Below are positions 20,567 through 63,284 of a DNA stretch of 64,000 bases, in pieces. The stretch covers positions 124,001 to 188,000 of the IMG/VR virus record IMGVR_UViG_3300024999_000029. One strand, 5' to 3'. Under the pieces are notes generated by a model, which saw only the letters and a program-made list of their open reading frames with translations, was not told the origin of the DNA and made no database searches. The translations under genes and the position numbers were made by a program. Position 1 is the stretch's first letter; every line of letters starts with the position of its first letter.

Positions 20567-20800
20567 TATAAAACAAAACTTTTAATCAAAAATATAAAAT
20601 GATTTCCCATTTTTACTTGATGAAACCATTATTTTAATTGAAAAGACGAATAAGGATTGGTTAGTTGGGGTATTCTCAAAATAGAGGTTATTACCTCTTT
20701 CTTTTTAAAATTACTTGTGAGAGCAAGTTAATATAGAGGTTAGAGACATTCAGTTATGAGTGTCTCTTTTTTATTATTCAAATTTCAAGGGGGAAATAAA

Positions 20801-21331
20801 ATGAGCGAGGTGATTAGTCATTTACTAGGATTCTTAAAAATCTTAAAAAATGAAATGGTTTGGTTGGTCAGTTTGATATTGACTACGTTTTTAAGTGCAA
20901 TAGGATATCCAAAAGAAATAATCGTTTTTATTTTTGTTTTAGTAATTGCTGACGTAATCAGCAGAATGATGGCAGAAGTTTATAAAAAATATAAAACTAT
21001 AAGCTTATATTATTTTGTAATTTCATGGAAGGGAGAAGACAAAACCCTATCAAGCAAGAAACTTAAATATGGTCTATTTGCAAAAATATTCTTTTATGGA
21101 GTTTTCTTATATGTTGCTAATCAAACTAGCATTATTCCAGAAGTTATTTGTGGTCAAGCAATCAGCACATTTTTGTATAGTATGATTGTTGTAATCGAAT
21201 TTTCTTCAATTCTTGAAAACTCTATAGACCTTGGGTTTAAACGGTTTAAGCCTATATTGCAATTCTTCAATAAGAAAAGAGATGAATTAGTGGGTGAGAA
21301 TATTGAAAGAAATGATACTCCTGTTGAATAA
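20801..21331 (+). CDS. Phage holin (holin family 4-like)
   Basis: Several TM segments, FVLVIADVISR...IEFSSILENSIDLG motif; directly before the endolysin. Confidence 0.75.
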   Translation: MSEVISHLLGFLKILKNEMVWLVSLILTTFLSAIGYPKEIIVFIFVLVIADVISRMMAEVYKKYKTISLYYFVISWKGEDKTLSSKKLKYGLFAKIFFYGVFLYVANQTSIIPEVICGQAISTFLYSMIVVIEFSSILENSIDLGFKRFKPILQFFNKKRDELVGENIERNDTPVE

Positions 21332-21361
21332 AAAATATAAAAGAATGGAAGGTGATTACTT

Positions 21362-21961
21362 ATGATAGATTTAAATAAGTTAAATCCATATGTAAAAATT
21401 CTTACTGAAAAGTTTTTAGCTGAGTGTAAAAAACAAAATATTAATGTAACTATTACACAAGGTTTACGAACAATAGCAGAACAAAACGCATTGTATGCTC
21501 AAGGAAGAACTACTTCTGGAAATATTGTGACTCAAGCCAAAGGTGGTAACTCAATGCACAACTACGGTCTGGCTGTTGACTTTGCTCCAATAGTTAATGG
21601 TAAAATTGATTGGAATGATATTGCATTATTTAAAAAAATCGGGAAAATTGGTCTTTCTGTTGGATTTGATAGTTATGGAGGTGATTGGACTAGTTTTAAG
21701 GACTATCCGCACCTTCAGTGGACTGGCGGATTAAGTTTATCCGATTTGAAATCGGGAAAAGTTCCTACTATTCCAAAAGAAGGAGATGATAACGTGGAAC
21801 ATAATACTATGAAGCTTTTTTATTCTGATGGAACTCCAGTAAAGGTTGATAATTATAAGATTGATGGTAGCACATATGTGAATCTTAGAGATATATTATC
21901 TGCCAGAGTTAAGTCAATTAAAGTGGTTCAGGGGGATAAAATTTACCTAATCAAACAATAA
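21362..21961 (+). CDS. Endolysin, M15 family L-Ala-D-Glu peptidase
   Basis: GLRTIAEQNALYAQGRT, SMHNYGLAVDF and DYPHLQ zinc-ligand motifs. Confidence 0.9.
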   Translation: MIDLNKLNPYVKILTEKFLAECKKQNINVTITQGLRTIAEQNALYAQGRTTSGNIVTQAKGGNSMHNYGLAVDFAPIVNGKIDWNDIALFKKIGKIGLSVGFDSYGGDWTSFKDYPHLQWTGGLSLSDLKSGKVPTIPKEGDDNVEHNTMKLFYSDGTPVKVDNYKIDGSTYVNLRDILSARVKSIKVVQGDKIYLIKQ

Positions 21962-21974
21962 GGAGGTATTATTT

Positions 21975-22304
21975 ATGGATTACATATTTTATATATTATT
22001 CGCAATCACATCTATATTAGCAGTTCTAGAAATTATTAAACTTGTGAAATCTAGTGATGGAAAGTTCACAGAAGATGGTTGGAATAAAATATCAAAAATT
22101 GGTTATGAAACTATTGATGAGTTAATAAAATTATACAATTCTAAAAAAGATAGAACGTTATTTATAATAGAAATAATTGATATTATCATGCTTAAAGTTA
22201 ATAATTTACCAGAAGATGTTAGAGAATTTTTTACTAGAGAGCGAATTGAAATATTTTTTAAACCAGCAATTGGGAGGTTGATTGATAAGTTAGAAAAGAA
22301 ATAG
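21975..22304 (+). CDS. Hypothetical membrane-anchored protein (lysis region)
   Basis: N-terminal TM helix; SD aggagg. Confidence 0.65.
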   Translation: MDYIFYILFAITSILAVLEIIKLVKSSDGKFTEDGWNKISKIGYETIDELIKLYNSKKDRTLFIIEIIDIIMLKVNNLPEDVREFFTRERIEIFFKPAIGRLIDKLEKK

Positions 22305-22317
22305 ATGAATACTTTTA

Positions 22318-22360
22318 GGGGAAGATGTGACTTCGGTTACCTCTTCCCCACTATTTTTTT
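22318..22360 (+). terminator. Intrinsic terminator ending the late operon
   Basis: ggggaaga...cttcgg...tcttcccc hairpin followed by a T tract. Confidence 0.8.
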
Positions 22361-22443
22361 GCCTATTTTTGTTGTACCCCATTGATTGTATAAAAGGTTG
22401 ATTTTATTGGGTTTTTAGCCCTACTCTCGCAATGGTTACGGGG

Positions 22444-22785
22444 TCAGTTTGTTGTACCCCAAGACAATTTTGTGTCAGAAATGAATGTAGGCTTGAAATT
22501 CGGGTCTTTATAGTTAATTGTGTATGATCCGTCGGAATTTATTATTACCTCGCTAATTAGCTCTCTCATGAACTTATTATCTTTAATAAATTGAGTATTT
22601 GATATATTACATTGTTTTAAAACTACTGAAGCTAATTCTTCTTCGTTTATGAAGCTTTTATTTATACATGCTTGTGTGCCATTTTTTAAACGGTTGTTGC
22701 AGCGATAATTTATTTGATTACGTTCTTTCCTACCTTTATATGTGTGGTTGCAATTTTGACAATGGATTAGTGAACTGAATAACAT
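22444..22785 (-). CDS. Stand-alone recombinase zinc-beta-ribbon domain protein
   Basis: LFSSLIHCQNCNHTY...YRCNNR...C...FINEEEL pattern; directly downstream of the serine recombinase. Confidence 0.75.
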   Translation of the reverse strand: MLFSSLIHCQNCNHTYKGRKERNQINYRCNNRLKNGTQACINKSFINEEELASVVLKQCNISNTQFIKDNKFMRELISEVIINSDGSYTINYKDPNFKPTFISDTKLSWGTTN

Positions 22786-22845: not shown

Positions 22846-24588
22846 TTAAGAAGCAAGTTCAAATTGTAAATCTATAATGTAATTAACCTCTACAGGATGT
22901 GTATCTCTAGCGTTTTTCTTTCTAAAAAATTTAAACATGCGTTTGTTATCTTCTATATGTGTGATAAACATCAAATGCATATCTCTTATGAAGTAAACTG
23001 GTATTTCACCCAGACCCGCTTTTAATACAACATTAATGCATATTTCATTTTTTTCTTTCCCTTTTGATACTTCAATTTTTTCCAAAAATTTATCCATTGT
23101 TTCTTCGTCTAGTTCACTGTTAATATCAAAATCAAAATTAAAGAATTCTTTTAATGATTTTACTTGTGATGCTACATCATACTTTGCATCGTTTAATTTT
23201 TCATAATTTTTTATTCGTTTTTCATAACCCTCAATTTCATCATTTAAATCTTTAATTTGTTCTTGATAATCGTTGTCCGCTACATTTCCTCCCGCATATA
23301 ACCGTAAAAGATTTTTCTTTAATACTTTATTTTCATTTATATTGTTCATCAACTCTTTAATATCTTTGTCATAATTAACTTCTTTTAAATATTTAGAATG
23401 TAGTTCAGTTAATTCTTTGCTAAAAACGTTTTTATACTTAGAATACATATGTAGTACGTGTTTCATAATATCATCCAACTCATTTTTATACATCATTGGA
23501 CTATCGCAAAATTTTTTACCTTTTTTTCTATAAATTTTACATTGCCATACTTCTTTTGATTCTATAGTGTCGTATTTATAAAAATTTCTCCAATATGATG
23601 TTTTGTGTTCTGAGCAAATTATTTTTCCAGAATATAAGAATTTATTTTGATACGATGTCTTATCTTCGGATGTCATTTTTTCACTTCTTTGTTTTAAGAT
23701 ATTGTTTGCCTTTTCCCATATTTCCTCGGAAACAATTGGTGGAACGCTTTCATAATCTTTATATGTTATCCATTTATCTGAATTAAAAAACTCTCGCTCT
23801 TTTGTAATAAAATCTATTGTTGTTGATTTTTTACCACAATAATATCCCTTATATTTTGGATTAGTAATAATAGATTTTATAGTATTAAACGTAATGGGGT
23901 TTCCGTTTCTATTTACAATTTCTTTTTGAGACAGCATATCGGATACTGTCCTTATTCCTTTATTTTGATTTGCATATAAATCGAAGATTTGACATACAAT
24001 TTCAGCTTCTTCTTTCTCTATTACTAGTTTGCCATTTTCTTTATTATATCCCCATATTTTATTATTCCCCAACACTTTTCCCGAATCGATTGAACGTTTA
24101 TGCCCCCATTTAACTCTATCTGATATCTTTCTACTTTCTTCTTGAGCTAAACTAGACATTATGGCAAGTTTAACCTCCGAATCTGGCATCAAGGTATTTA
24201 TTCCATCATTTTGAAATAGCACTCCTATACCGTATTTTAATAATTCTCTAGTATAAAACAAGCTATCAATTGTATTTCTAGCAAATCTACTTACTTCTTT
24301 AGTTATAACTAAATCAAATTTCTTATTTCTTCCGTCTTCAATCATTTGGTTAAATGCTTCTCTTTTATTGATTGATGTGCCTGTAATACCTTCATCGATG
24401 TATCCTTCTACGAGAGTCCAATTATTACAACTTTTAATATGTTCTTCAAAATAATTAATTTGATTCTTGAGAGAGTTTAATTGATCTAAGGTAGAAGTTG
24501 ATACCCTAGTATAATATGTAACTCTTAACTGTAAGTCGTAGATAGATTTGCCTAGATTCAAAGTATTTCTAATTGTATATAAGTCCAT
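22846..24588 (-). CDS. Large serine recombinase (integrase)
   Basis: YYTRVSTS catalytic motif, YIDEGITGT, KEVSRFARN, recombinase domain, Zn ribbon (SGKIICSEH) and coiled coil. Confidence 0.95.
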   Translation of the reverse strand: MDLYTIRNTLNLGKSIYDLQLRVTYYTRVSTSTLDQLNSLKNQINYFEEHIKSCNNWTLVEGYIDEGITGTSINKREAFNQMIEDGRNKKFDLVITKEVSRFARNTIDSLFYTRELLKYGIGVLFQNDGINTLMPDSEVKLAIMSSLAQEESRKISDRVKWGHKRSIDSGKVLGNNKIWGYNKENGKLVIEKEEAEIVCQIFDLYANQNKGIRTVSDMLSQKEIVNRNGNPITFNTIKSIITNPKYKGYYCGKKSTTIDFITKEREFFNSDKWITYKDYESVPPIVSEEIWEKANNILKQRSEKMTSEDKTSYQNKFLYSGKIICSEHKTSYWRNFYKYDTIESKEVWQCKIYRKKGKKFCDSPMMYKNELDDIMKHVLHMYSKYKNVFSKELTELHSKYLKEVNYDKDIKELMNNINENKVLKKNLLRLYAGGNVADNDYQEQIKDLNDEIEGYEKRIKNYEKLNDAKYDVASQVKSLKEFFNFDFDINSELDEETMDKFLEKIEVSKGKEKNEICINVVLKAGLGEIPVYFIRDMHLMFITHIEDNKRMFKFFRKKNARDTHPVEVNYIIDLQFELAS

Positions 24589-27704: not shown

Positions 27705-28073
27705 TTATAATAATTGTAGTCTTTTAATATACTGTTGCGTTTCTGACTTCCGCATTACTCCTAACCCGACACATGTTAAACTTCCAGTAGGTATTTCAGT
27801 CAATCCTAAATCTTCAATATAGTAAAATCCCTCTTCTTTAAGTTTTAATAAATCTTTAGTCTTACCTCTTAATATAATTTTCTTTTGGTTGTGGTTTGTA
27901 TACCACTCTATAAATGTTTTCTTTCTTTCCACCCATAGTTTATTTTCTTGAAAGCACAAACTATCAAGTGAAATAATGGTCGCAACATGAGCCACTTGAC
28001 CAGCTATTTTACCGACAGACATATTTAATTCTGAATTTATTATGTAATATTGAACTAATTCGTCTCTATCCAT
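27705..28073 (-). CDS. pth2: Peptidyl-tRNA hydrolase type 2 (Pth2), copy 2
   Basis: YYIINSELNMSVGKIAGQVAHV, QKKIILR, IEDLGLTEI...LTCVG, ending QLL. Confidence 0.88.
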   Translation of the reverse strand: MDRDELVQYYIINSELNMSVGKIAGQVAHVATIISLDSLCFQENKLWVERKKTFIEWYTNHNQKKIILRGKTKDLLKLKEEGFYYIEDLGLTEIPTGSLTCVGLGVMRKSETQQYIKRLQLL

Positions 28074-28095: not shown

Positions 28096-29289
28096 TTATA
28101 TTTTGATTAAAAGTGATTTTTTATTGAAACTTTGTTGTATTTCCCAATCTTTTTTATACATCCATTTATATCCACCAGACTGTTTATATTCGCCTTTACA
28201 AACTTCCGAAATATGATATGCTCCAGTTTCACTTTTTGCTTTTCCAACACTGTCATACTTATTAATTATTTCACCTGTATTTATATTTAATTGTACTACT
28301 GGGTTTGATTGTTGATCGAATTTTTTATATTTACACCAATCTAATTCATCACCTTGTTTTAAATATTTAGTAATAGTTTTTCTACTTAATTTTATTTCTT
28401 TGCTAATATCTAAAGTATTATTCATACCACTATTCCATAAATCACAGACCGATTTCACTAACGAATTACAAGCAAATTCATGACACCTTATCCAATCAAT
28501 TCTTGATAAATCAAATATATTTATTATTTCACTATCTAATATATTAGTTTTTATGTATTGTAAATTAGGCGACTGTGCATCAATAATTATATAATTTGTA
28601 ATTCCGTTTATTTTGGCAATACATTCTTTTATTTCATCATTTTCTCGTTCTTCTTTTAGAGTCCTTAATGAATTAGGAAAACTTTTTTCATAATGTTGGT
28701 TGCCGTGTACCTCAATTATAATATTTTTATTTTCAATATAAAAATCGTATATCTTAGTACCATTAAGCTTTGTATTTGTATGTTCAATGTTTTTACTCCA
28801 GCTAAAAACATGTTCTGTTGTGAATTCAATACCTAACTGAATTAAAACATTATACATAAATTTCTGGGCATAACTCACCCCGTCAGAACACTTAGGGCAA
28901 GACAAACCTCGTTTACTAATATTATTTATTGATTTGTTTATTATTATATTTTCGCATTTGTCGCATTTCCAATTCACAAATACACTACTTGCTTGAGTAT
29001 ATTTAAACCCATCATTTTTATCATGCAGCAAATTAGCTAAACTAGGATTAGTTGTCCACATATCATTAATTCCTATTTTAACTTTTTTGTTAGAGCATAT
29101 AGGACATTTACGATTGGCTTTTAAATGATATTCATCCATTTTCCCTATATATTTACATTGCAAACATTCATATTTATAGCCTTTAATAGTATGTTTCCCA
29201 TGGTTAATCCTAATTAGGTTTAATATTTTTATATTACCATTGATTACATCATTAATATTATACTTGTATTTATGTGTTATGTTTTCCAA
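28096..29289 (-). CDS. Putative homing endonuclease (zinc ribbons, PD-(D/E)xK nuclease, C-terminal NUMOD1)
   Basis: CPICSNKKV...NPSLA treble-clef pattern; YDFYIENKNIIIEVHGNQHY; PVVQLN...INKYDSVGKA...CKG.YKQSGGYKW. Confidence 0.8.
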   Translation of the reverse strand: MENITHKYKYNINDVINGNIKILNLIRINHGKHTIKGYKYECLQCKYIGKMDEYHLKANRKCPICSNKKVKIGINDMWTTNPSLANLLHDKNDGFKYTQASSVFVNWKCDKCENIIINKSINNISKRGLSCPKCSDGVSYAQKFMYNVLIQLGIEFTTEHVFSWSKNIEHTNTKLNGTKIYDFYIENKNIIIEVHGNQHYEKSFPNSLRTLKEERENDEIKECIAKINGITNYIIIDAQSPNLQYIKTNILDSEIINIFDLSRIDWIRCHEFACNSLVKSVCDLWNSGMNNTLDISKEIKLSRKTITKYLKQGDELDWCKYKKFDQQSNPVVQLNINTGEIINKYDSVGKAKSETGAYHISEVCKGEYKQSGGYKWMYKKDWEIQQSFNKKSLLIKI

Positions 29290-29362: not shown

Positions 29363-29986
29363 TTATAATTGATTTAAATTTTCAGCTTCTTTTAACCACT
29401 GCTTTATTTTTATAAGCTTTTCTTCTGAGAAGAAATCTTTGGATCTAAGCCAAGCTTCTATATCTAACTGTCTTTTACTACTATTACACCCTTTACATGA
29501 TGGAACGCAATTATTTATTGTATTAACTCCATTGTGTATTACATGTTCTTTATGTAATTGTTGTCTATATTTTTCTTTGTGGTCTTGTTCGCTAGTTCCA
29601 CAATAAGCACATTCATGATTAAAATAATCTAAGCAATATTTCCATTCTTTATTATTTATTTTATGATTTTTGTTTCTTCTTTTTTTACTATATTCATTAA
29701 CTTTATCACGATGTTGTTTTTGATACTCTTTGGTATATTCTAAGATGTGTTTTTTATTATTTTTTCTCCACAATTCATCTTTAGTTGATTCTCTTTCTTT
29801 ATTTCTTTGTTTCCATTGTCTTTGAGATTCTCTTGATTTATCTAAATTTTTCTCTCTATATATTTTTTGGTATTCATCCCTACAATGCTTACATGGTTGC
29901 CCCAGTTTTCCATTTACTTTGTAAAAATATTCCTCTGTTGCAGGTTTGTATTCTCTGCATTTAGTACATTGTTTTAATTCTTCCAA
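29363..29986 (-). CDS. HNH endonuclease (putative homing)
   Basis: CAYCG...LHKEHVIHNG...NCVPSCKGCNSSK. Confidence 0.85.
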   Translation of the reverse strand: MEELKQCTKCREYKPATEEYFYKVNGKLGQPCKHCRDEYQKIYREKNLDKSRESQRQWKQRNKERESTKDELWRKNNKKHILEYTKEYQKQHRDKVNEYSKKRRNKNHKINNKEWKYCLDYFNHECAYCGTSEQDHKEKYRQQLHKEHVIHNGVNTINNCVPSCKGCNSSKRQLDIEAWLRSKDFFSEEKLIKIKQWLKEAENLNQL

Positions 29987-30232
29987 TTCTTCACCTCCTA
30001 AATTACAATAGAATCACTCTTTTATCGTAAAATACGTTTCTACAGCCCTACTCTCCCAAGGGTTTCAAAAATGGAGAGTCTTGAAAATCATAAAATCTTG
30101 CCAAAATTAGGTTTTCCTCATTATTTAAGCATTTGGAACTCAAAACCTAATATTAGTCCGACTGTAAAGCATAATAAAAGCAAAATAACGTATTTTAAGT
30201 AATTACTCATGTTTTTCTCCTTATTTTATATT

Positions 30233-33038: not shown

Positions 33039-33076
33039 TACTGATCTCCTTCTTATATTTCATTCAAAATAAATTT

Positions 33077-33550
33077 TTATTTGGCTATTCGCTTTCTCCA
33101 TTTATTATTTTTTTTTCGTAAGTTTTGAGAATACTCGGTTAAATAATTTTTTAGTGGTTTTATTTCTTTTAATGATGTAAAGTTTAAAGTTTTTATTTCA
33201 GTTGCACCAAGCCTATCCCAACTTTCTTCTCTATGCCATGATGCTAATATCGGGTATTCGTCAGCAGAAGGTACTAATGTGTTTTCATTGACGTTATTCA
33301 ATAAAAATTCTTCTAACTCGGATACATTTTTTATTAAATAGTTTTCTTCGTCACAACTTTCATTCTCATAATCTTCATATCTAACGTCTAAATCATTTAA
33401 TATATCATATAAAGTTTCAAACATTGGGATATCTCCACCACAATAATTTTCTGCACCGTGTTTTAGAAACCATTTCAATAGCTTAGTAAATTCAGAATGA
33501 TTGTTGATTATGCATTGGTTTGTGCTATGTGTATAATCTTTTAATGCCAT
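33077..33550 (-). CDS. Hypothetical protein
   Basis: Coupled to the upstream ORF. Confidence 0.6.
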   Translation of the reverse strand: MALKDYTHSTNQCIINNHSEFTKLLKWFLKHGAENYCGGDIPMFETLYDILNDLDVRYEDYENESCDEENYLIKNVSELEEFLLNNVNENTLVPSADEYPILASWHREESWDRLGATEIKTLNFTSLKEIKPLKNYLTEYSQNLRKKNNKWRKRIAK

Positions 33551-34050: not shown

Positions 34051-34658
34051 AATTTTATATCTCCTTTATTAAAATAGAACTTTATTCTAAACTAGTTTCT
34101 ATATCATATATAAATTGTTTCGATTCTAAATATTTATATCTATTGTGCATTAAATTATCTATTGCCTTTAGTATCTTTTTGCTTTCTCAAAATTTCCATA
34201 TATACATTCAACATAATGCCATTCAAGTAGCCTAGTGAGTGTATCAGAATAGGTAATATGCATCACGACCTCCTAAATTAATAATTTGAATAGTCCTATG
34301 AGTAAAGCTGCTGGTAATAACATCCACGCAATCATAGATAATATTATACTTGTCCATATAACTACTATAACTAAACAACCAGCCCAATAAACAATTTGAT
34401 TCAATAATTTCAATAACCATATTTTAATTTTTGTAACCATGTTTCTCCTTTCTCATTTACTGAATAAATCTTTGACTTTTGCATATAATAAATTGGCAAC
34501 TAAAGTTTCTGCAAGATTATCTTTTTATTGCAGGATAGAAGAGAAATCTTCTATCCTTTTACTCAAACTTACCCTTTGAATAAAACCCGAATTTCATCAA
34601 AATTTATCCATTCTGACAGCCCCATAGAGCGATTATTTTAGGGAGGGTAATATACTTA

Positions 34659-35902: not shown

Positions 35903-36354
35903 TAAAACTCCCCTTTTATGTATATTTTTTGATTGCTTGTAGCCAGTTTAATTCCATATTGTATATTGTTTTCTGTTTTTAAATCTTCTTTGTACTCCCC
36001 GCACTTTATATAATCACAAAGATTTTTTATTCCTGTTGGTATTTGCTGTATTTCATATCTAGTCCATAGCCATATATTTTTATTAGCTATTTTTAGTCCT
36101 CTAATGAGAGATATTACTTCATCATGATTTTGATTTAAAGGTTCTCCTCCTAATATCCAAACGTGTTTTATTAAAGTATCAAACCTTTTTATTTTTTTTA
36201 TTATATCCTCTAAAACTAAGGGGGAGAGGGGGACTCCTAGTGAGAAGTCCTTTAACTCTGGATTATGACAACCTTTACACTTTCCATTACAACCTGATAA
36301 ATATATTTCAAAACTTTCGGTATCTAAACTATACTGAGTTGATGCCATATTCAT
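35902..36354 (-). CDS. nrdG: Anaerobic ribonucleotide reductase activase (radical SAM)
   Basis: GCNGKCKGCHNP, LGGEPL and ATSNQ motifs; adjacent to nrdD. Confidence 0.88.
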   Translation of the reverse strand: MNMASTQYSLDTESFEIYLSGCNGKCKGCHNPELKDFSLGVPLSPLVLEDIIKKIKRFDTLIKHVWILGGEPLNQNHDEVISLIRGLKIANKNIWLWTRYEIQQIPTGIKNLCDYIKCGEYKEDLKTENNIQYGIKLATSNQKIYIKGEF

Positions 36355-41056: not shown

Positions 41057-41099
41057 ATTTTCTCCCCTCTTTTTATTTTTATAAAATTCTGTTTTTATC

Positions 41100-41396: not shown

Positions 41397-41432
41397 GATT
41401 CTTCTCCTTTTTGTTAAAATTTTGGATTTATC

Positions 41433-42461: not shown

Positions 42462-42814
42462 TGATGTACCTCTCTTTTATATTTTATTTCATTAAAATTT
42501 CAGTTTTATTCTATATATTTTAGTTTCTCAAATGTGTCTAAATCAGGGTTTGCGGTCAACAATATCTCCCATAATGCCGATACGTAGTCTGAATTATCAT
42601 CAAAATATAGGACATTATTTGCAATTCTATAAACTTCATCTAACTTTTCTTTGATATCTAGCATATTTACCTCCATAATTATTCTCTACAGGCTCTAACA
42701 ATCATTGCAATGGCTGCACCTAAGCCTAACAGTGGGATCCATCCAAAGAACATAAATAGTTGTAAAGTAGTGGCTGTATTATTGTCCATTGTTTACTCCT
42801 TTCAATGAAAATCA

Positions 42815-43453: not shown

Positions 43454-43686
43454 TTATTCCTCACTCTTTTATATTTTAGTTTATTACAATAAAACTTTAC
43501 TTTTAATTAAATTCTTAGCTACTTATCCTAAGGCTTTCTCTACTTCTTCCATATATTTTTCAGTATTTTCGTTTATTTTTTCTCTCAACAAACTATTGAT
43601 TGATTGAGAGAAAGTTTCATTTCTACACATTGCCCGAAATAATATGTAATCATTTATTTCTTTTTCAATCTTAATTATTTTTAACA

Positions 43687-43872: not shown

Positions 43873-43900
43873 ATTTCCCTTTCCCAATAAAAGTTAGCTT

Positions 43901-44548
43901 TTATATTGTTTGTAGACTTCTATGATAATCTATCCATTCTTGACTTTCTAAATTTTCTGCTACGACAATATCAAAATATTCTTTCCTCATATCTTGCAAT
44001 GTAAACTTTTCAATCTTTCTCTTTTTAAAGTTCTTATTAACTTTCTGAATTATAGTTGCATTGTTCATCGGATAAAGCTTAGTCAATCTTTCTTTTTCCG
44101 CTATAGCTTCTTTTTCTAGCCTAATTAATTCAGCTTCAGCCCTCTTTTTCAATTCTTCCTCTTCATCAATAACATTTTCCAAATCAATCTCTAAAGTAAT
44201 CCATTTATTTTCGGCATGAGCGGGAATAATCTCTTCAGGTATCAAAATTTCTTTAATTTCATAAAATTCATAAGGATCTTTGTCATAATTATAATCTGTA
44301 AAATATGAACCACTTCTTGATACACCACGAGATACCCCAAAATTAAACGACTGTATTTCTTTATATTTTTCATCTATTTCTATTAATTGACCTTCTTCGT
44401 TTTTATACTGATACTTACCTTGATCGTCCCATGAATCATCTCCAACTTCTTTGAACATATAAGTCTTGCCATCATGCTCATACATAAAATCATCTAGATC
44501 TAATTTGCCTAATTCTTTAACTATTTTTGAAAACAATTTAATATCCAT
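43901..44548 (-). CDS. Hypothetical protein
   Basis: 215-aa acidic ORF; SD aaggaga. Confidence 0.65.
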   Translation of the reverse strand: MDIKLFSKIVKELGKLDLDDFMYEHDGKTYMFKEVGDDSWDDQGKYQYKNEEGQLIEIDEKYKEIQSFNFGVSRGVSRSGSYFTDYNYDKDPYEFYEIKEILIPEEIIPAHAENKWITLEIDLENVIDEEEELKKRAEAELIRLEKEAIAEKERLTKLYPMNNATIIQKVNKNFKKRKIEKFTLQDMRKEYFDIVVAENLESQEWIDYHRSLQTI

Positions 44549-45879: not shown

Positions 45880-45912
45880 TTTAATAACCTCACTTTCAAT
45901 AAAACCTGATTT

Positions 45913-46260
45913 TTATTCTTCTTTATTTTGTAAATCAACCAATGCCTCATCTGCGTCTGATTTATTAGTAGATATAATTACTTCTTTTTCATATAGAAAA
46001 TAATCACTTTCAAAACTATCAGATTCTGTCTCTAAATATTGATTATTAGAAAAAATATACATTAATCCATCCTCGTCATAAGTTATACCTTTTAGATAAA
46101 CCTCGTTTAATTGCCATCTATCTTCCCAAATAGGCTTGGTCTGATATTCTTCGTAATTTAATTCTTTCATTATATAAAGCTTTTCTTCTCCCACAGAAAC
46201 TAATTTTTTCGTCAAAATCCATAAGTGTTGTCCAATTTCATAAGGTATATCAATTTTCAT
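45913..46260 (-). CDS. Hypothetical protein
   Basis: SD gggagga. Confidence 0.6.
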   Translation of the reverse strand: MKIDIPYEIGQHLWILTKKLVSVGEEKLYIMKELNYEEYQTKPIWEDRWQLNEVYLKGITYDEDGLMYIFSNNQYLETESDSFESDYFLYEKEVIISTNKSDADEALVDLQNKEE

Positions 46261-46408
46261 TCTAATTCCTCCCTTTCTATAAAACTAGCACTTTATTGAG
46301 TTTATTCCTCTACGGGCAATAGCATTTCAGCCACCGCTTTTTCAAAAATTATGTCTGACCATTGTTCATAAGTGTTTTTCATTGATTTTATCCTATTTTA
46401 TATTTTAT

Positions 46409-46870
46409 TTAACTAAACTCTCTAGGAAATTGATATTCAATTGGACAATTTACCAATAAATCTAAAAATTCACATGCAGTAAACTCATCGCCATATTCAT
46501 TTATAACAACTTTTTCTTTACAGTTTTCTGTTAGTTTTAAAAGTTCACTTTTATGTTTCATTAATGTCCAAGTAAAAGAGCTACAACTACTTACTCCAGT
46601 TCTATTCAACCCTTGTTTATTAAATCCTAACTCAAGACCCATACTGCTACTTTCCAAAGATTCTTCTATCCTCTCTTTTCCACATGATGGACATTTTGAA
46701 TACCAATTAGATTCAGAATAGTGAATACTTCTTTCGCCATCCTTACATAAAGTTGTTCCACAATCCCAACAATATAACCCTGCTGCTGATCTTTTTCCTA
46801 TATGAACTTGAATATCGCCATTGTATTCATCATCTTTATATTTATCTTTCCAATAATAATTTGTTCCCAT
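46409..46870 (-). CDS. Hypothetical protein (MGTNYY...HIGKRS family, zinc-binding)
   Basis: CWDC and CPSC motifs. Confidence 0.65.
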   Translation of the reverse strand: MGTNYYWKDKYKDDEYNGDIQVHIGKRSAAGLYCWDCGTTLCKDGERSIHYSESNWYSKCPSCGKERIEESLESSSMGLELGFNKQGLNRTGVSSCSSFTWTLMKHKSELLKLTENCKEKVVINEYGDEFTACEFLDLLVNCPIEYQFPREFS

Positions 46871-47840: not shown

Positions 47841-47878
47841 AATAACCTCATAAAACGAAAATTTTATTTTATTTTATT

Positions 47879-48067: not shown

Positions 48068-48106
48068 ATTAACTCCTTTTATATTTTTATTAAAACAAGA
48101 ATTTAA

Positions 48107-48448: not shown

Positions 48449-48488
48449 ACCTCATTTATATTTTACTTAATGAAATTAAACTTTTAAC

Positions 48489-48722: not shown

Positions 48723-48756
48723 TCTCCTTTATATTTTATTTAATGAAATTGAAGTT

Positions 48757-49038
48757 TTAAATTAATAATTTAATCTCTTCCCAAAGTGCATCGGCTAATT
48801 CTTCCCTATAGGTATGGTCTGTGTCCCACATATATTCTTCAGAATAATAATCACACAATCTCTCAAATATTATGTTTGGCTTATAACTTATTAATATTTC
48901 AATCATTTTGCCTATAGTAAACTTTTTATGATGTACGTGAGTATAATCTTTTGGCTTTCCTATGTCTTCTCCTAATAATTTACATACTTGCTCTTCAGCA
49001 ATTTTCGCACATTGTTTTGGAGTTATATGCTGTTTCAT
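48757..49038 (-). CDS. Hypothetical protein
   Basis: MKQHITPKQ...TIGKMIEIL...ELADALWE pattern. Confidence 0.6.
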   Translation of the reverse strand: MKQHITPKQCAKIAEEQVCKLLGEDIGKPKDYTHVHHKKFTIGKMIEILISYKPNIIFERLCDYYSEEYMWDTDHTYREELADALWEEIKLLI

Positions 49039-49281
49039 ATTTCACCTCTCTATAAAATCTGTGTTTCATTGTAATTCTGCGTTTTTATCATAAATTAGCT
49101 CTAAGTGGCTCATATCAGGCTTTTCATCATAGATTATTGCATCTATGATATATCCTATTTCGGAACCGTTGACATCACTGAAGTCCACGATGACTTCCAT
49201 CCATTTTCCATTATCCATTTTTTTAAAGTAGTGTTGTAGCATAACGCCTCTCTTTCATTTCAATAAAACCGCAATTTTAAT

Positions 49282-49820: not shown

Positions 49821-49821
49821 A

Positions 49822-50283: not shown

Positions 50284-50398
50284 TATAGCTCCTTTTATAT
50301 TTTATTTTAATAAATCAACGGTTTTATCGTAATTCTATGTCTATATGTAGTGGTATATCAGTATAATATGCTATATATAGTATGTTAATTTTTATGTT

Positions 50399-50737: not shown

Positions 50738-50836
50738 GTTTACATCCTTCCCACTTTCAATAAAAAATACCTTTTAACGCAATTTTGTATCTATATATTG
50801 TATATCTATCTATTATTTTACTACATATTGTACTTT

Positions 50837-51055: not shown

Positions 51056-51466
51056 AAATCCTCCTATAAAATATACTTTTGATTTTATTCTTCGTCTTCA
51101 GCTTGATACATTTCCATAGCATCATCATATCCTGACCAATTATCAACTCCACATCCTAAGAGACATTCTAATTTCCATTGGTCATCCAATAAATTTTTAT
51201 ATTCTTTTTCCGAAATAGTTACCATAGGTTCTTTCATAATTTAATTCTCCTTTATTTTATATTTTATTTGATAAAAGCCAAATTTTATTGAGCTATACAA
51301 ACGCTGCAAGCACAACCAAAACATTCCTTTTCTCCATTAGATTTTTCACATTCGTCCATATCACATTTCATTTGTTTTGTAAGCCTTTTAACTATATAGC
51401 CATTATCTATAAGTATTTCAATTGCTTCTTTAATTTTATCTTCCATATTTTTATATTCTCCTTTAA

Positions 51467-51937: not shown

Positions 51938-51962
51938 ATCTCTATCCTCTCATTTTATATTT

Positions 51963-52298
51963 TTAATTCCACGTTCTATGTTTTTCACGAATATATTCTC
52001 CTACATCACAGTCATAGGTTTTTATAGTCCACTCAACGCCATCTGGTATTTCTACAATTTTACATATTCTATCTTCATTTTCATATTTATCTCTACCAAC
52101 TACAAAATTTCTTTCTATCATTACTTGATGAAGTTTTTCATCTACTCTTAGATTATTTATTTCATCATGATTTCGTATAAATAAATCCATCCAATAATAT
52201 TTTTCCTCACTATGACCATAAACTTCTCCAAGAATGGTTGCAAAATCTTCTTCCGAATAATGTAGCTCACAATTTACGCCAATTAATATTTTCTGCAT
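51963..52298 (-). CDS. Hypothetical protein
   Basis: KIVEIPDGVEWTI...EYIREKHRTW phage family pattern. Confidence 0.65.
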   Translation of the reverse strand: MQKILIGVNCELHYSEEDFATILGEVYGHSEEKYYWMDLFIRNHDEINNLRVDEKLHQVMIERNFVVGRDKYENEDRICKIVEIPDGVEWTIKTYDCDVGEYIREKHRTWN

Positions 52299-52469
52299 TT
52301 CTACCTCCTATTATCTCTTGTTTTCTCACTCTAGTTTCAATTTGCTAATGCATAATTTAAATCAAATACCATTTTTATTGAAATAATTATCCAAAGTTTT
52401 CCTTCCTCATTAAATATACCACTGCTGTTTTTATTTGTCAACTATTTTATATTTTACTTTATTAAATGT

Positions 52470-60757: not shown

Positions 60758-60979
60758 TTATATTTTTGCTTCCTCTTCAACTTTTTCTTCGGGTTCCTTT
60801 TTTACTTCTTCAATCTTATCCACTATATATTTAGCGTTTTCATGCTTGCCATCTTTGTTGAATTTAGTTACACCCATTAAAATTCTAACTGCTGATAGTT
60901 CATTTAATGCTTCGACCAAAGTTGTTCTAGTCATTGGGTTATATCTAGTCTTTTCTGTGTAAGTGATATTAAATTTCAT
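60758..60979 (-). CDS. Hypothetical protein
   Basis: SD aaaggaga. Confidence 0.6.
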   Translation of the reverse strand: MKFNITYTEKTRYNPMTRTTLVEALNELSAVRILMGVTKFNKDGKHENAKYIVDKIEEVKKEPEEKVEEEAKI

Positions 60980-61029
60980 ATTTTTCTCCTTTAAGTTTTA
61001 TATTTTTGTTTTAACATGAAAAATTATTT

Positions 61030-61230
61030 GCCCCTGTATATGATTCCGCATATACTTTAACGGTCTGGCAGACCGAACCTTTTGTCTCACCTGAGTTATC
61101 CACAAGCTATTACAAGTGGAACAATATCATTTGGCATCGATCCAAACTCCCTTCACACCAGTCCTCGGTCAGCGAGCAAGATTTGAACTTACCTCCTGGT
61201 ATAATAAAGGGCATTAACCCGTATTACCTT
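61030..61230 (-). ncRNA. Candidate structured ncRNA with a tRNA-like T-arm
   Basis: GC-rich intergenic island; on the minus strand GTAAG-TTCAAAT-CTTGC plus hairpins tttgg/ccaaa, ccac/gtgg, cggtct/agaccg and gtatatg/catatac. Confidence 0.45.
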
Positions 61231-61242
61231 AAAATGAAAATT

Positions 61243-62040
61243 TTATTGAAATATTGATTTCTGCAAGCTTACAGTCGCAAGGGTTTCAATTTTATTAATT
61301 CTTCCCAGTATGCGATTTTGAGCTATTTCGTAGTAATTTTTATCTAATTCAAACCCTATGTAATTTCTATTAGTATTTATAGCTGCAACTGCAGTTGTTC
61401 CTGAACCAATACAGTTATCTAGGACTATTTCTCCTTCGTTTGTATATGTGTTAATTAGCCATTCACACAACTCTACTGGCTTTTGAGTAGGGTGCAAAGA
61501 TATTGATGGATGAGGTTTTGAAAACTCTAATATAGATGTTGGAAATTTCATATCCCCTTTAGTTTCAACACATTTAAAATCTCCATAATTATTATTTTGC
61601 AAAACAGCATCATTCATTTTTCCTACAACACTACCTTTTTTATGACACGGATTGCCTTTAACCTTTTGTGGATTGTATATTGGTTGCTTTTTATAAAATA
61701 TCATTATGTCTTCATGTTCTCTTAATGGTTGTCTATTAGCATTTAAAAATCCACTTGATAAAACTTTCTTCCATATTAAATTATATCTATGTATTTTTTT
61801 ATTCGATAATATTGTCTCTGCAGTAAATTTATCTTGACCAAATAAAATTATCGCTCCATTATCTTTGATAATCCTTTCATACTGCTCCCATAGTAGTTGA
61901 TAAGAAATTATTGTATCCCACTTATTTTTTGTAGTTACTCCATAAGGTAAGTCACAAAGAATCATATCTATTGATTTATCGTCTATAAGCTTCATGCCTT
62001 CTAAACAATCTTGGTTATATATCTTGTTTAACTCAATCAT
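61243..62040 (-). CDS. N6-adenine/N4-cytosine DNA methyltransferase (beta class)
   Basis: DLPYG, HPTQKP and LDNCIGSGTT motifs. Confidence 0.92.
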   Translation of the reverse strand: MIELNKIYNQDCLEGMKLIDDKSIDMILCDLPYGVTTKNKWDTIISYQLLWEQYERIIKDNGAIILFGQDKFTAETILSNKKIHRYNLIWKKVLSSGFLNANRQPLREHEDIMIFYKKQPIYNPQKVKGNPCHKKGSVVGKMNDAVLQNNNYGDFKCVETKGDMKFPTSILEFSKPHPSISLHPTQKPVELCEWLINTYTNEGEIVLDNCIGSGTTAVAAINTNRNYIGFELDKNYYEIAQNRILGRINKIETLATVSLQKSIFQ

Positions 62041-62277
62041 TTATACCTCGTTATTTTATATTTTATTTAATTAAGACAGAACGAGAATTTGATATTAATT
62101 TAAACTATAATGCATAAAACTCATTGCTGAAATTAAAAACGCAACTCCCATTTCAACTTTGTTAGGACAATATCCAAAGAACAACGATACAAATAAAATT
62201 AAATAGTATAAACAAAATAGTATATTTAAAACCTTACCCATAGTTTTCTCCTTTCCATAAAAATCCGATTTTATTAA

Positions 62278-62649
62278 TTATATTATTGATGGAAAATAAA
62301 GCTCATTTGCTAATACGCTTTCTAATACTTTAAGATAAACTCCTAATTCACTATCTGAATGAAAATAGTATTCTTTAATCCACCTATCTAATTCTTTGTC
62401 ATAGTTTTTAATTATTCCTTGGTACTTTTTATTTTTTGACGGACAAATATCTTTAAGGCTGCCTTTGCATGATTGATAACAATTATATCCTTCTTTACTT
62501 TCACATTTATTTATTTCTAATCTTCTTGTATCTGACCTAAGTAATGTATAAACCATTGTCTTAATATCTTCTTCTACTTGCTTTTTAACCGCTTTTTGCT
62601 TATAAACTCTTGCTTGATAATAATAATCCTTATTGTCTGTTCCTATCAT
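62278..62649 (-). CDS. Hypothetical protein
   Basis: SD aaggagg. Confidence 0.6.
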   Translation of the reverse strand: MIGTDNKDYYYQARVYKQKAVKKQVEEDIKTMVYTLLRSDTRRLEINKCESKEGYNCYQSCKGSLKDICPSKNKKYQGIIKNYDKELDRWIKEYYFHSDSELGVYLKVLESVLANELYFPSII

Positions 62650-62873
62650 GATATCCTCCTTATTTTATATTTTAATTAAAAGTCTTATTTTATTTATATT
62701 CCCAATTTGCAATATATGGCTGTCTCATTGCCTGTTTTAACCATTCCTGAAAATCTGATTCAATTATGTTTTCTGGAGTTTGTTCAACATAATCCATTTC
62801 TTTTTCGACACAACAACATTTAAAAATAATTTTCATAATAAACTCCTTTTATATTTTGAATCAAAATCATATT

Positions 62874-63284
62874 TTAAAGCATAGACTCAATTTCATTAAG
62901 CTCAAGTTCAACCTTTTTACCATCGGATAATAGCTTTAAAAGTTTATCTTCCATCAATTTAAGATTATTTTCTTCTGCTTTTCGTGAAAGAATTGCAATT
63001 CTAGATTTAATATCGGTGATCCAATCTTCTACCTTATATCCACTAATCACATATTCGTCCAATACACCTAAATCTTTTGCGGAAAGCACATAGGAGTTTA
63101 GTTTAATCATAATTGAAATCAAATCTGGTCTTGCCAAAACCTGAATATTATATCTTACAGCATCTACCTCTAGAGAACAATTTGTAACTGGCGAAAACCT
63201 TGTTGATTTACTCAATTGGGCTTTTTTACTTTCTATTTGCTTCTTTAAAAGCATAATCCTTTGGTCATTTGTTTCATTATTCAT
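62874..63284 (-). CDS. Hypothetical coiled-coil protein
   Basis: Coupled to the upstream ORF. Confidence 0.65.
   Translation of the reverse strand: MNNETNDQRIMLLKKQIESKKAQLSKSTRFSPVTNCSLEVDAVRYNIQVLARPDLISIMIKLNSYVLSAKDLGVLDEYVISGYKVEDWITDIKSRIAILSRKAEENNLKLMEDKLLKLLSDGKKVELELNEIESML

What the first reader, a model, noticed from the sequence alone, without database searches (positions are those of the whole stretch)
20569..62876. Recurring TAAAA-N6-TTTTA palindrome at accessory gene ends, often starting with the stop codon (cassette boundary or operator network)
Seen in sequence: perfect copies begin at 20569, 22391, 28108, 41082, 42493, 43490, 43888, 45900, 47851, 49264, 50761, 51272, 61230, 62258 and 62677. 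One-mismatch copies (TGAAA/TCAAA arms and similar) begin at 33064, 34581, 46280, 48471, 48744, 49053 and 52362. The 6-bp spacer differs in every copy. Nearly all lie at the 3' end of a gene, just before the next RBS. In several, one arm supplies the stop codon (genes ending at 33077, 43901, 45913, 48757, 61243, 62874). Rough expectation at about 36% A and 36% T is only 2-3 perfect copies per window, randomly placed; coding regions were not scanned exhaustively. Established knowledge: two inverted arms around a 6-8 bp spacer is the geometry of tyrosine-recombinase core sites (dif/pdif), and integron attC sites overlap cassette stop codons. SPbeta-type phages encode tyrosine-recombinase-fold proteins, including the repressor MrpR. 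Inference: either a phage cassette-shuffling system that builds the array of small accessory genes, or many operators for one dimeric phage protein. The cognate protein is not identified in this window.
Basis: partly seen in the sequence, partly recalled or inferred. Interest (0 to 1): 0.8.

Follow-up and report, generated by a model that had tools for sequence, protein, structure and literature searches.

The report
Palindromic gene-cassette junction sites in SPbeta-type phages
A short DNA palindrome (TAAAA, six variable bases, TTTTA) marks the borders between small genes in this phage and in Bacillus phage SPbeta and its distant relatives, and related phages swap genes exactly at these marks, so it probably works as a docking and crossover site for shuffling gene cassettes.

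Summary
TAAAA-N6-TTTTA occurs 18 times against 2.3 expected, only with a 6-base spacer, and almost only in the 11% of non-coding DNA between minus-strand genes.

The window is a very distant SPbeta-type phage. An MrpR homologue lies about 27 kb beyond the window's end. The same palindrome is the top dyad in SPbeta (34 copies) and Geobacillus virus E3, and second in Staphylococcus phage SPbeta-like. It is absent from phi105 and from about 1 Mb of other AT-rich viral DNA.

It is the core of a longer dyad, tYt-nnW-TAAAA-N6-TTTTA-Wnn-ARA, with 11-6-11 geometry like a dif site. Mirrored positions do not covary and the RNA hairpin is unstable, so it is most likely read as duplex DNA.

Homology between SPbeta, phi3T and SPR starts or stops within 0-3 bases of palindrome edges. 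Gaps with a palindrome carry breakpoints 42/63 times, against 32/119 without. Palindromes with the same 6-base centre sit in the same order while flanking genes differ. The window phage and a relative show the same pattern.

Best reading: protein-bound cassette junction and crossover sites. The enzyme is not identified. It is not the MrpR operator (SPBRE). I found no published description.

The parts
20569..20584 (.). Perfect palindrome in the gap between plus-strand genes 20104-20457 and 20756-21331 (holin).
22391..22406 (.). Perfect palindrome between convergent genes 21975-22304 (+) and 22444-22785 (-), next to the serine integrase module.
28108..28123 (.). Perfect palindrome in the last codons of the HNH ORF 28096-29289 (-). 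Motif A and the SD of 27705-28073 follow it.
30009..30024 (.). One-mismatch copy, 22 nt upstream of the start of the YoqL-like HNH gene 29363-29986 (-).
33064..33079 (.). One-mismatch copy. Its arm supplies the stop codon of 33077-33550 (-). It lies 25 nt before the next start.
34581..34596 (.). One-mismatch copy in the long gap after 34659-34880 (-).
41082..41097 (.). Perfect palindrome after 41100-41396 (-), 25 nt before the next start.
41415..41430 (.). One-mismatch copy after the methyltransferase gene 41433-42461 (-), 18 nt before the next start.
42493..42508 (.). Perfect palindrome. Its arm is the stop codon of 42506-42664 (-). Motif A and an SD follow.
43490..43505 (.). Perfect palindrome after 43523-43687 (-). 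Motif A and an SD follow.
43888..43903 (.). Perfect palindrome. Its arm is the stop codon of 43901-44548 (-). It lies 15 nt before the next start.
45900..45915 (.). Perfect palindrome. Its arm is the stop codon of 45913-46260 (-).
46280..46295 (.). One-mismatch copy, 19 nt before the start of 45913-46260 (-).
47851..47866 (.). Perfect palindrome after 47879-48067 (-). A (TAAAA)5 run precedes it in coding sense.
48091..48106 (.). One-mismatch copy after 48107-48442 (-). Motif A follows.
48471..48486 (.). One-mismatch copy after 48489-48716 (-). Motif A follows.
48744..48759 (.). One-mismatch copy. Its arm is the stop codon of 48757-49038 (-). Motif A follows.
49053..49068 (.). One-mismatch copy. 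Its arm is the stop codon of 49066-49242 (-).
49264..49279 (.). Perfect palindrome after 49282-49575 (-).
50311..50326 (.). One-mismatch copy, 27 nt before the start of 49822-50283 (-). Motif A follows.
50761..50776 (.). Perfect palindrome, 23 nt before the start of 50399-50737 (-).
51067..51082 (.). One-mismatch copy after 51085-51237 (-).
51272..51287 (.). Perfect palindrome. Its arm is the stop codon of 51285-51446 (-). Motif A follows.
52362..52377 (.). One-mismatch copy in the 171-nt gap after the DNA polymerase gene 52470-54791 (-).
61230..61245 (.). Perfect palindrome. Its arm is the stop codon of the methyltransferase gene 61243-62040 (-). Homology to relative L125 ends at its edge.
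62258..62273 (.). Perfect palindrome with centre TCGGAT. The same centre occurs in relative L125 with non-homologous flanks (an island).
62677..62692 (.). Perfect palindrome with centre TAAGAC. Its arm is the stop codon of the 48-aa ORF 62690-62836. It is shared with L125 as an island, with different genes on both sides.
62861..62876 (.). One-mismatch copy. Its arm is the stop codon of 62874-63284 (-). Together with ORF 62690-62836 it forms an extra cassette that relative L125 lacks.
13025..13040 (.). Perfect match whose spacer is the GGAGG ribosome-binding site of a plus-strand gene. Probably coincidental.
35903..35918 (.). Perfect match that spans a stop/start overlap, with GGGGAG in the spacer. 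Probably coincidental.
46538..46553 (.). Perfect match inside ORF 46409-46870 (-). Status unclear.

Best explanation
TAAAA-N6-TTTTA is the invariant core of a roughly 28-bp dyad-symmetric DNA site. Its consensus in SPbeta and in this phage's lineage is tYt-nnW-TAAAA-N6-TTTTA-Wnn-ARA, that is 11-6-11. The site sits at the border between gene modules of SPbeta-type phages.

How it is read (inferred): two copies of a sequence-specific protein bind it as duplex DNA. It is not a hairpin.

What it does (shown by comparison of genomes): it is the place where modules are exchanged between related phages. Each site has its own 6-bp centre. Sites with the same centre lie in the same order in related genomes, while the genes between them are replaced, inserted or lost.

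Most likely mechanism (inferred): conservative site-specific recombination of the tyrosine-recombinase (Xer-like) kind between same-centre sites of two co-resident phages or prophages. That would swap the cassette between two sites while keeping gene order. Insertion of a new cassette would add a new site.

Side effect (shown from sequence): the left arm often doubles as the TAA stop of the upstream gene.

The protein is not identified. The candidate in SPbeta, Geobacillus virus E3 and Staphylococcus phage SPbeta-like is the Xer-like YopP family. In this phage it is unknown.
For: 1. The motif is real, N6-specific and confined to gene borders.

2. It is conserved across very distant SPbeta-type phages that share no DNA similarity.
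- SPbeta has 34 copies against 0-4 at other spacers, and phi3T has 30.
- Geobacillus virus E3 has 14 copies in 41 kb and Staphylococcus phage SPbeta-like has 6 in 31 kb.
- Several IMG/VR contigs carry it as well.
- It is absent from phi105 and shows no N6 excess in about 1 Mb of other AT-rich viral loci.

3. The flanks extend the dyad to 11-6-11. A at +21 occurs in 26/27 (SPbeta), 21/25 (window lineage) and 21/24 (other contigs).

4. It is not a nucleic-acid structure. Mirrored positions do not covary (-5/+20, Fisher p = 0.22). The forced RNA hairpin averages +1.3 kcal/mol. Arm mismatches are not compensated.

5. Junctions in SPbeta, phi3T and SPR coincide with the sites.
- Gaps with a palindrome carry a homology breakpoint 42/63 times against 32/119 without one (odds ratio 5.4, p = 3e-7).
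- 15 of 79 left ends of homology blocks lie within 3 nt of a palindrome start.
- In gaps without a palindrome the breakpoints are scattered.

6. Same-centre palindromes form islands. Of 44 same-centre pairs between genomes, only 6 have both flanks homologous and 21 have neither; about 6 of these are expected by chance. The order of centres is collinear in SPbeta, phi3T and SPR.

7. The window lineage behaves the same way. Homology blocks end at 66806, 62873 and 61232. The centres TAAGAC-TCGGAT-TTTTCA lie in the same order as in relative L125, with different genes between them. A 48-aa ORF plus a palindrome is an extra cassette.

8. The inner arms resemble those of single-recombinase Xer sites: difSL TTTCCGAAAA / TTTTCTTGAAA, and difH GAAAA-N6-TTTTC (PMC5357621).

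9. The YopP family has the Xer-like domain pair and R..HxxK..H..Y.
Against: - No recombinase was shown to act on the sites. No YopP-like gene was found in the sampled roughly 110 kb of this phage or on its contig.
- In YopP the second catalytic arginine is a lysine.
- The invariant arm is only 5 bp. The outer arm is weak in E3 (7/14) and absent in Staphylococcus phage SPbeta-like (1/6).
- One junction (SPbeta 87603) joins one left arm to different centres. A strict requirement for identical spacers does not predict this.
- Any conserved border motif will attract BLAST block ends. It can also serve as microhomology for the phage's Sak4-type annealing protein, so general recombination plus selection could give the same pattern.
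- The junction statistics use related genomes, so the events are not independent.
- A laboratory phi3T x SPbeta hybrid was uninformative: its crossover interval is 13 kb of identity.
Confidence: 0.55

Rival explanations
1. Operator network. The dyad binds a dimeric phage DNA-binding protein that regulates or insulates transcription of each small gene module. The coincidence with mosaic junctions is secondary: conserved border sequence, microhomology and selection for intact modules.
For: - The 5-N6-5 geometry with half-sites one helical turn apart suits a helix-turn-helix dimer.
- The sites lie 5-35 nt upstream of ribosome-binding sites. More often than not they travel with the downstream gene: 15 left ends of homology blocks lie at a site start, against 6 right ends at a site end.
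- Some SPbeta sites sit next to SPBRE promoters, for example upstream of aimR and yorE.
Against: - Most sites have no sigmaA-like promoter nearby.
- Sites also occur after terminators and between convergent genes.
- Junctions concentrate at the site edges rather than across the whole gap.
- 16-19-nt islands with both flanks replaced are hard to get without crossovers at the site itself.
- No candidate regulator is shared by all lineages.
Confidence: 0.25
2. The same junction function, but the sites are used by the host's own Xer recombinases (CodV/RipX type), as in Xer-exploiting mobile elements and pdif modules. No phage enzyme is involved.
For: - The inner arms are invariant across phages whose core proteins are only 25-35% identical. 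That fits a slowly evolving host factor.
- The geometry is 28 bp, 11-6-11, as in Bacillus dif. The dif sequence was confirmed in the literature (PMC5357621).
- No phage recombinase was found in this phage.
Against: - The match to Bacillus subtilis dif is weak, by my own comparison: inner arms TAGAA/TTATG against TAAAA/TTTTA, with different outer arms.
- Phi105, from the same host, has no such sites.
- The host of the window phage is unknown.
Confidence: 0.1
3. RNA-level element. A small AU hairpin at the stop codon acts in translational coupling, mRNA processing or termination within polycistronic early transcripts.
For: The sites overlap stop codons and precede ribosome-binding sites in co-directional gene arrays.
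Against: - The forced 5-bp hairpin averages +1.3 kcal/mol. The MFE of the 16-mers is about 0.
- There is no compensatory change or covariation.
- Sites occur between convergent genes, and between terminators and promoters.
- There is no Rfam match.
Confidence: 0.05
4. Compositional by-product: a TAA stop followed by A-rich sequence, then T-rich sequence before the next gene, in AT-rich DNA.
For: The genome is 28-30% GC. Two or three of the perfect matches are explained by an SD sequence in the spacer.
Against: - The N6 specificity is strict in the window, SPbeta and E3.
- There is no N6 excess in about 1 Mb of other AT-rich viral DNA, nor in AT-rich NrdD-bearing phage contigs such as L140.
Confidence: 0.01

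Closest known systems
Xer/dif core sites, including the single-recombinase difSL/XerS and difH/XerH, and plasmid pdif modules bounded by Xer sites (pdif from my own knowledge)
   Same: - 11-6-11 dyad of about 28 bp.
- AT-rich inner arms. difSL and difH have GAAAA...TTTTC; here TAAAA...TTTTA. The difSL right arm TTTTCTTGAAA is close to the frequent window form TTTTATTGAAA.
- In pdif modules, genes bounded by such sites move as units.
   Different: - Dozens of sites per genome, each with a different centre, instead of one dif.
- The invariant arm is only 5 bp.
- No recombinase is demonstrated.
- The match to Bacillus dif is poor.
- The sites overlap stop codons.
Integron cassettes (attC sites at cassette 3' ends, IntI tyrosine recombinase)
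   Same: - Arrays of small, mostly promoterless genes, each followed by an imperfect palindromic site that overlaps or abuts the stop codon.
- Homology between arrays breaks at the sites.
- Single-cassette insertions occur.
   Different: - The site is 16-28 bp of duplex-type dyad, not 57-141 bp folded single strand.
- No intI, attI or Pc platform was seen.
- The order of sites is conserved between genomes, which suggests replacement in place rather than insertion at one end.
T4-type PeSL mobile regulatory cassettes and lambdoid 'boundary sequences' (my own knowledge of Arbiol et al. 2010 and Juhala et al. 2000; not checked here)
   Same: Short conserved intergenic motifs flank variable small ORFs in phage hyperplastic regions and coincide with mosaic junctions.
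   Different: PeSLs are an early promoter plus a stem-loop and work by homologous recombination. Here there is no promoter and no stable stem, and the geometry is a strict dyad with a unique centre at each position.
SPBRE, the MrpR operator of SPbeta (PMC10516654)
   Same: A repeated dyad in the same phage group, bound by a protein with a tyrosine-recombinase fold.
   Different: SPBRE is ATACA-N7-TGTAT embedded between the -35 and -10 of about 11 sigmaA promoters. The palindrome here has different arms and spacing, has 34 copies in SPbeta, and did not appear among the 10 MrpR ChAP-seq peaks.
CRP-type operators (TGTGA-N6-TCACA; my own knowledge)
   Same: 5-N6-5 inverted repeat.
   Different: Different arms, no linked promoter architecture, and extra outer half-site elements.

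Membership tests
Tyrosine-recombinase (Xer/dif-type) core site | Two inverted arms of about 11-13 bp around a 6-8 bp central region | tested here: met
   The consensus is tYt-nnW-TAAAA-N6-TTTTA-Wnn-ARA over 103 distinct sites. The outer arm is weaker in E3 and absent in Staphylococcus phage SPbeta-like.
Tyrosine-recombinase (Xer/dif-type) core site | A cognate catalytically competent tyrosine recombinase is available | tested here: inconclusive
   - The Xer-like YopP family is present in SPbeta, E3 and Staphylococcus phage SPbeta-like, with R..HxxK..H..Y.
- None was found in the window, in its sampled extensions or on its contig.
- MrpR homologues lack the first catalytic Arg.
- A host Xer enzyme is possible but was not tested.
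Tyrosine-recombinase (Xer/dif-type) core site | Strand cleavage and exchange at the borders of the central region; identical centres in the two partners | not testable with these tools
   - Indirect support: same-centre islands and collinear centres.
- One junction has different centres.
Tyrosine-recombinase (Xer/dif-type) core site | Sequence match to the host dif site (needed only if host Xer is used) | tested here: not met
   The Bacillus subtilis dif sequence was confirmed in the literature. By my own comparison its inner arms are TAGAA/TTATG against TAAAA/TTTTA, and its outer arms differ.
Integron (attC cassette array) | intI gene with attI and a Pc promoter at the head of the array | tested here: not met
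   No tyrosine recombinase was found in or near the array.
Integron (attC cassette array) | attC of 57-141 nt that folds as a single strand with extrahelical bases | tested here: not met
   The site is 16-28 bp with no stable fold and no covariation.
Integron (attC cassette array) | A site at the end of each cassette; homology between arrays breaks at the site | tested here: met
SPBRE / MrpR operator | The 15-bp motif found in the MrpR ChAP-seq peaks, located in early promoters | tested here: not met
   I derived SPBRE from the 10 bound promoters as ATACA-N7-TGTAT within a -35/-10 pair. The palindrome differs in sequence, spacing, copy number and position.
Intrinsic terminator or structured RNA element | A stable stem kept by compensatory changes, and for a terminator a G+C-rich stem plus a U run | tested here: not met
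Regulator operator (dimeric DNA-binding protein) | A dyad with half-sites one helical turn apart, a cognate regulator, and an effect on transcription | tested here: inconclusive
   The geometry is met. No regulator was identified and no expression data were available.

The most novel reading that the evidence does not exclude
SPbeta-type phages carry dozens of heterospecific, Xer-like recombination sites. The invariant arms recruit one recombinase, either the phage's YopP-type enzyme or a hijacked host Xer. The unique 6-bp centre of each site acts as an address. Co-resident phages can then swap single gene cassettes position for position without scrambling gene order. This would be a natural counterpart of recombinase-mediated cassette exchange, and a phage analogue of integrons.
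Probability: 0.3. Interest if true: 0.9.

Novelty: new variant of a known kind. Interest (0 to 1): 0.8.

Why it matters
Phage genomes are mosaics, but the molecular basis of clean gene-by-gene exchange is mostly put down to rare illegitimate recombination followed by selection. Here a defined, strictly spaced DNA site marks the exchange points. It does so in a large and widespread phage group that includes SPbeta of Bacillus subtilis, one of the best-studied temperate phages, where I found no description of it in the papers searched.

If a site-specific enzyme is involved, three things follow:
- It would explain how these phages turn over their many small accessory, defence and counter-defence genes.
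- It would give a direct handle for predicting module borders in uncultivated relatives.
- It would offer a set of natural heterospecific sites for engineering.

The question can be tested directly in B. subtilis with existing strains.

Tried and rejected
- **Near-DNA search.** A search of 40000-52000 against the phage collection found no match.
- **DNA polymerase as bait.** In viral contigs it recovered only the source contig. In genome contigs it found nothing. Its protein relatives are small unrelated phages.
- **Composite pattern scan of viral contigs.** The scan (palindrome plus motif A) was mostly noise, but it surfaced a few true relatives.
- **Motif A or the palindrome as a sigmaA promoter.** Rejected. 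Motif A abuts the SD, and there is no -35 at the right distance.
- **YonO RNA polymerase promoter or terminator.** YonO transcribes one late operon from one start, so this is not relevant (PMC5467207).
- **MrpR/SPBRE identity.** Rejected.
- **RNA structure.** Rejected. There were no Rfam or tRNA hits.
- **Gene co-occurrence.** Comparing loci with and without the motif was uninformative, because the loci are partial.
- **Laboratory phi3T x SPbeta hybrid.** The crossover interval is 13 kb of identity, so it is uninformative.
- **Population variants of one cassette gene.** All contexts were the same.
- **NrdD relatives.** More distant motif-bearing contigs share no centres with the window.
- **Broken toxin or effector genes.** None was met.

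Full report
**1.

- The pattern TAAAA-N6-TTTTA has 18 exact matches in the window. Dinucleotide-preserving shuffles give 2.31 +/- 1.59 (largest 6).
- The excess is confined to a 6-base spacer. Spacers 0-14 other than 6 give 0-5 matches. Arm orders other than TAAAA...TTTTA are at background.
- In a scan of every 5-mer dyad at spacers 2-10, TAAAA-N6 is the strongest dyad in the window.
- GC skew and the ORF table show that every gene from 22444 to the window's end lies on the minus strand.
- In the array 24600-63856 only 11.3% of bases are non-coding. They hold 12 of 15 perfect and 15 of 20 one-mismatch copies. At 10 sites the arm itself is the TAA stop of the upstream gene.
- In coding sense the order in a gap is: stop, palindrome, sometimes a second motif, Shine-Dalgarno, start.

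**2. What the window is**

- The window equals positions 124001-188000 of IMG/VR contig 3300024999_000029.
- Its genes have an SPbeta-like layout:
  - a 2310-aa tail protein and lysis genes;
  - a large serine integrase;
  - a long one-directional array of small genes mixed with DNA polymerase, primase, DnaB helicase, SSB, a Sak4-like annealing protein, NrdD, methyltransferases and HNH endonucleases.
- Walking upstream along the same contig reached an MrpR homologue with both Pfam MrpR domains. It sits next to a divergent HTH/S24 repressor and a DndB-like YopQ homologue, as in SPbeta.
- Protein identity to SPbeta is only 25-43% for the few detectable homologues.
- There is no DNA-level match in the phage collection.

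**3. The palindrome is a hallmark of the whole phage group**

- SPbeta itself (NC_001884) has 34 copies, with 0-4 at any other spacer. The architecture is the same: the arm starts at or just after the stop of yoqG, yoqS, yoqY, yorT, mtbP, yorZ, yosC, yosF, yosR and others, 5-25 nt before the next ribosome-binding site.
- Phi3T has 30 copies.
- Among phages found through their MrpR homologues, TAAAA-N6 is the top dyad in Geobacillus virus E3 (14 in 41 kb). It is second in Staphylococcus phage SPbeta-like (6 in 31 kb).
- Several uncultivated contigs carry it too.
- Controls lack it:
  - phi105, from the same host as SPbeta, has none;
  - about 1 Mb of unrelated AT-rich viral loci show 37 N6 copies against 38-58 at other spacers;
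  - AT-rich NrdD-bearing contigs such as L140 have one.
- The motif is therefore lineage-specific. It is not a property of AT-rich DNA or of Firmicute gene ends.

**4. Anatomy of the site**

- Over 103 distinct sites the flanks add information. Position -1 and position +16 are A or T, almost never G or C. The first spacer base prefers G/T and the last prefers A/C.
- Three bases further out there is ARA downstream. A at +21 occurs in 26/27 SPbeta sites, 21/25 window-lineage sites and 21/24 sites in other contigs. Upstream there is a weaker mirrored TYT, which lies inside the preceding ORF.
- The full element is thus an 11-6-11 dyad of 28 bp.
- The outer element is weaker in E3 (7/14) and not seen in the Staphylococcus phage (1/6).
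- Mirrored positions do not covary: Watson-Crick counts match independence, and -5/+20 gives Fisher p = 0.22.
- One-mismatch variants are not compensated.
- The 5-bp hairpin forced on RNA averages +1.3 kcal/mol.
- The site is therefore most likely read by sequence, as two half-sites on duplex DNA.

**5. It is not the MrpR operator**

- The MrpR paper reports ten ChAP-seq peaks at SPBRE-containing promoters (PMC10516654).
- From those ten promoters I derived SPBRE as ATACA-N7-TGTAT, lying between a -35 and a -10. It also appears as a separate dyad in the unbiased scan.
- The MrpR homologues of SPbeta, this phage, E3 and the Staphylococcus phage all lack the first catalytic arginine (residue list from PMC10516654).

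**6. The sites are mosaic junctions**

- I compared the early regions of SPbeta, phi3T and SPR with local BLAST. Homology blocks begin or end within 0-2 nt of a palindrome edge at SPbeta 86899, 87603, 92392, 92747/92768, 99498, 113654/113662, 118486, 128075 and 131142.
- One palindrome (SPbeta 92753) is the left border of homology with phi3T and the right border with SPR.
- Over the three genomes, gaps of at least 15 nt with a palindrome carry a breakpoint in 42 of 63 cases, against 32 of 119 without one (odds ratio 5.4, p = 3e-7).
- 15 of 79 left block ends fall within 3 nt of a site start. 6 of 81 right block ends fall within 3 nt of a site end.
- In gaps without a palindrome the breakpoints are scattered over the gap.
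- These counts come from related genomes, so they are not independent events.

**7. Ordered islands**

- There are 44 between-genome pairs of palindromes with the same 6-base centre:

| Flank homology | Pairs |
|---|---|
| Both flanks homologous | 6 |
| Left flank only | 9 |
| Right flank only | 8 |
| Neither flank | 21 |

- About 6 identical centres are expected by chance over all 8796 pairs. Most of the 'neither' pairs lie within the SPbeta group, where my estimate of the chance expectation is about 1-2.
- The conserved island is the palindrome plus 1-3 nt. One example is a 19-nt stretch around centre AGACTG. It is present in SPbeta, phi3T and SPR with different sequence on both sides in all three.
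- The centres occur in the same order in the three phages, while the genes between them differ:

| Phage | Order of centres |
|---|---|
| SPbeta | GATGCA, GTAAAA, TTGAAG, AGACTG, GATAGT, TATTTA ... TTTGTC, TATTCC, TTCAAT, GTTTTA, GGATGA |
| SPR | GATGCA, GTAAAA, AGACTG, GATAGT, TATTTA ... TTTGTC, TATTCC, TTCAAT, GTTTTA, GGATGA |
| phi3T | GATGCA, AGACTG, GATAGT, TATTTA ... TTTGTC, TATTCC, TTCAAT, GTTTTA |

- Between GATGCA and GTAAAA, for instance, SPbeta has the antirepressor gene yoqD and SPR has an unrelated small gene.
- The yoqH-yoqI segment of SPbeta is bounded by two palindromes and is missing in phi3T.

**8. The window's own lineage does the same**

- The comparison is with a relative about 85% identical where alignable (contig 3300025030_000046, L125).
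- Homology blocks end in palindromes at window 66806, 62873 and 61232.
- The centres TAAGAC, TCGGAT and TTTTCA lie in the same order in both phages, with different genes between them.
- The 48-aa ORF 62690-62836, together with the one-mismatch palindrome at 62861, is an extra cassette in the window phage.

**9. Mechanism**

- Shown: a lineage-specific, strictly spaced dyad at module borders, with module exchange at its edges.
- Inferred: a protein reads the dyad, and crossovers happen in it.
- The 11-6-11 geometry is that of Xer core sites. The inner arms resemble those of the single-recombinase sites difSL and difH, as quoted in PMC5357621.
- SPbeta, E3 and the Staphylococcus phage encode a conserved Xer-like protein of unknown function, YopP. 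It sits next to yopQ-mrpR and has the SAM-like and catalytic domains and R..HxxK..H..Y.
- I could not find a YopP homologue in the roughly 110 kb sampled from this phage or on its contig.
- Alternative enzymes are host Xer recombinases. Bacillus dif, confirmed, matches poorly.
- Another alternative is the phage's general recombination proteins (Sak4-like annealing protein, SSB, RuvC-like resolvase) acting on the short conserved sequence.
- A pure operator function cannot be excluded either.

**10. Novelty**

- The closest known systems are integron attC arrays, Xer-site-bounded pdif modules, and the PeSL and boundary sequences of T4-type and lambdoid phages.
- This one differs in three ways: a short duplex-type dyad, many sites each with its own centre, and conserved site order.
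- I found no mention of it in the SPbeta review, the Spbetavirus comparative genomics preprint, the MrpR paper or a literal motif search. The original 1999 SPbeta genome paper is not in the library.

Noticed in passing
window 25411-62856 (minus strand, 37 copies) and 2081-21341 (plus strand, 8 copies): A second, oriented motif, AAAATATAAA(A), lies on the coding strand 0-8 nt upstream of many Shine-Dalgarno sequences. It sits downstream of the palindrome when both are present. AAATATAAA occurs 61 times against 12 expected. It is also present in the close relative L125 but not enriched in SPbeta (4+3). It lies too close to the SD to be a -10 element for the gene that follows. Function unknown.
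   Followed up: partly
window 38884-38984 and 52298-52470 (minus strand): In two longer gaps, motif A is followed directly by a canonical sigmaA-like promoter (TTGACT or TTGACA, about 17 nt, then TATAAT-like). These are likely internal early promoters of the array.
   Followed up: no
window about 47866-47890; 2075-2097: Short tandem runs built from the same half-site: (TAAAA)5 next to the palindrome at 47851, and (TATAAAA)3 at the end of the gene ending at 2089.
   Followed up: no
window about 61246-61295, 30025-30070, 22407-22450 (minus-strand sense): A roughly 25-nt repeated element (GAAACCCTTG-S-GA..GTA-R-G) lies just upstream of three palindromes in unusually long gaps. It is conserved in relative L125. 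There is no significant RNA fold and no Rfam match.
   Followed up: partly
window 22444-22785 (-) and 22846-24588 (-): A 113-aa ORF that consists of a recombinase zinc-ribbon domain lies just downstream of the 580-aa large serine integrase. It may be a fragment or a split second recombinase gene.
   Followed up: no
window 29393-29974; L124 8753-9397 (about window 64460-65104); L129 2566-3189; L130 15640-16275: This phage has four paralogues of the YoqL-type HNH endonuclease. YoqL is the protein best conserved with SPbeta (35-43% identity). Whether the enzyme has any link to the palindromes is unknown.
   Followed up: partly
L129 1-511 and L130 10660-12941 (same phage, about 27 kb beyond the window's right end): An MrpR homologue (317 aa), a DndB-like YopQ homologue and a divergent HTH/S24 repressor form the lysogeny module. 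No YopP-like gene lies next to them, unlike in SPbeta, E3 and the Staphylococcus phage.
   Followed up: partly
SPbeta 39886 (L119) and hybrid PP526179: The border between diverged (about 90% identity) and identical sequence of SPbeta and phi3T lies 5 nt to the left of a palindrome. The identical sequence then runs for 13 kb. The laboratory hybrid's right crossover lies somewhere in that identical stretch.
   Followed up: yes
all 103 sites (spacer positions 5 and 10): The first and last spacer bases form a Watson-Crick pair less often than expected from their frequencies (20 against 33). This would keep the centre asymmetric. The signal is weak after correction for multiple tests.
   Followed up: no
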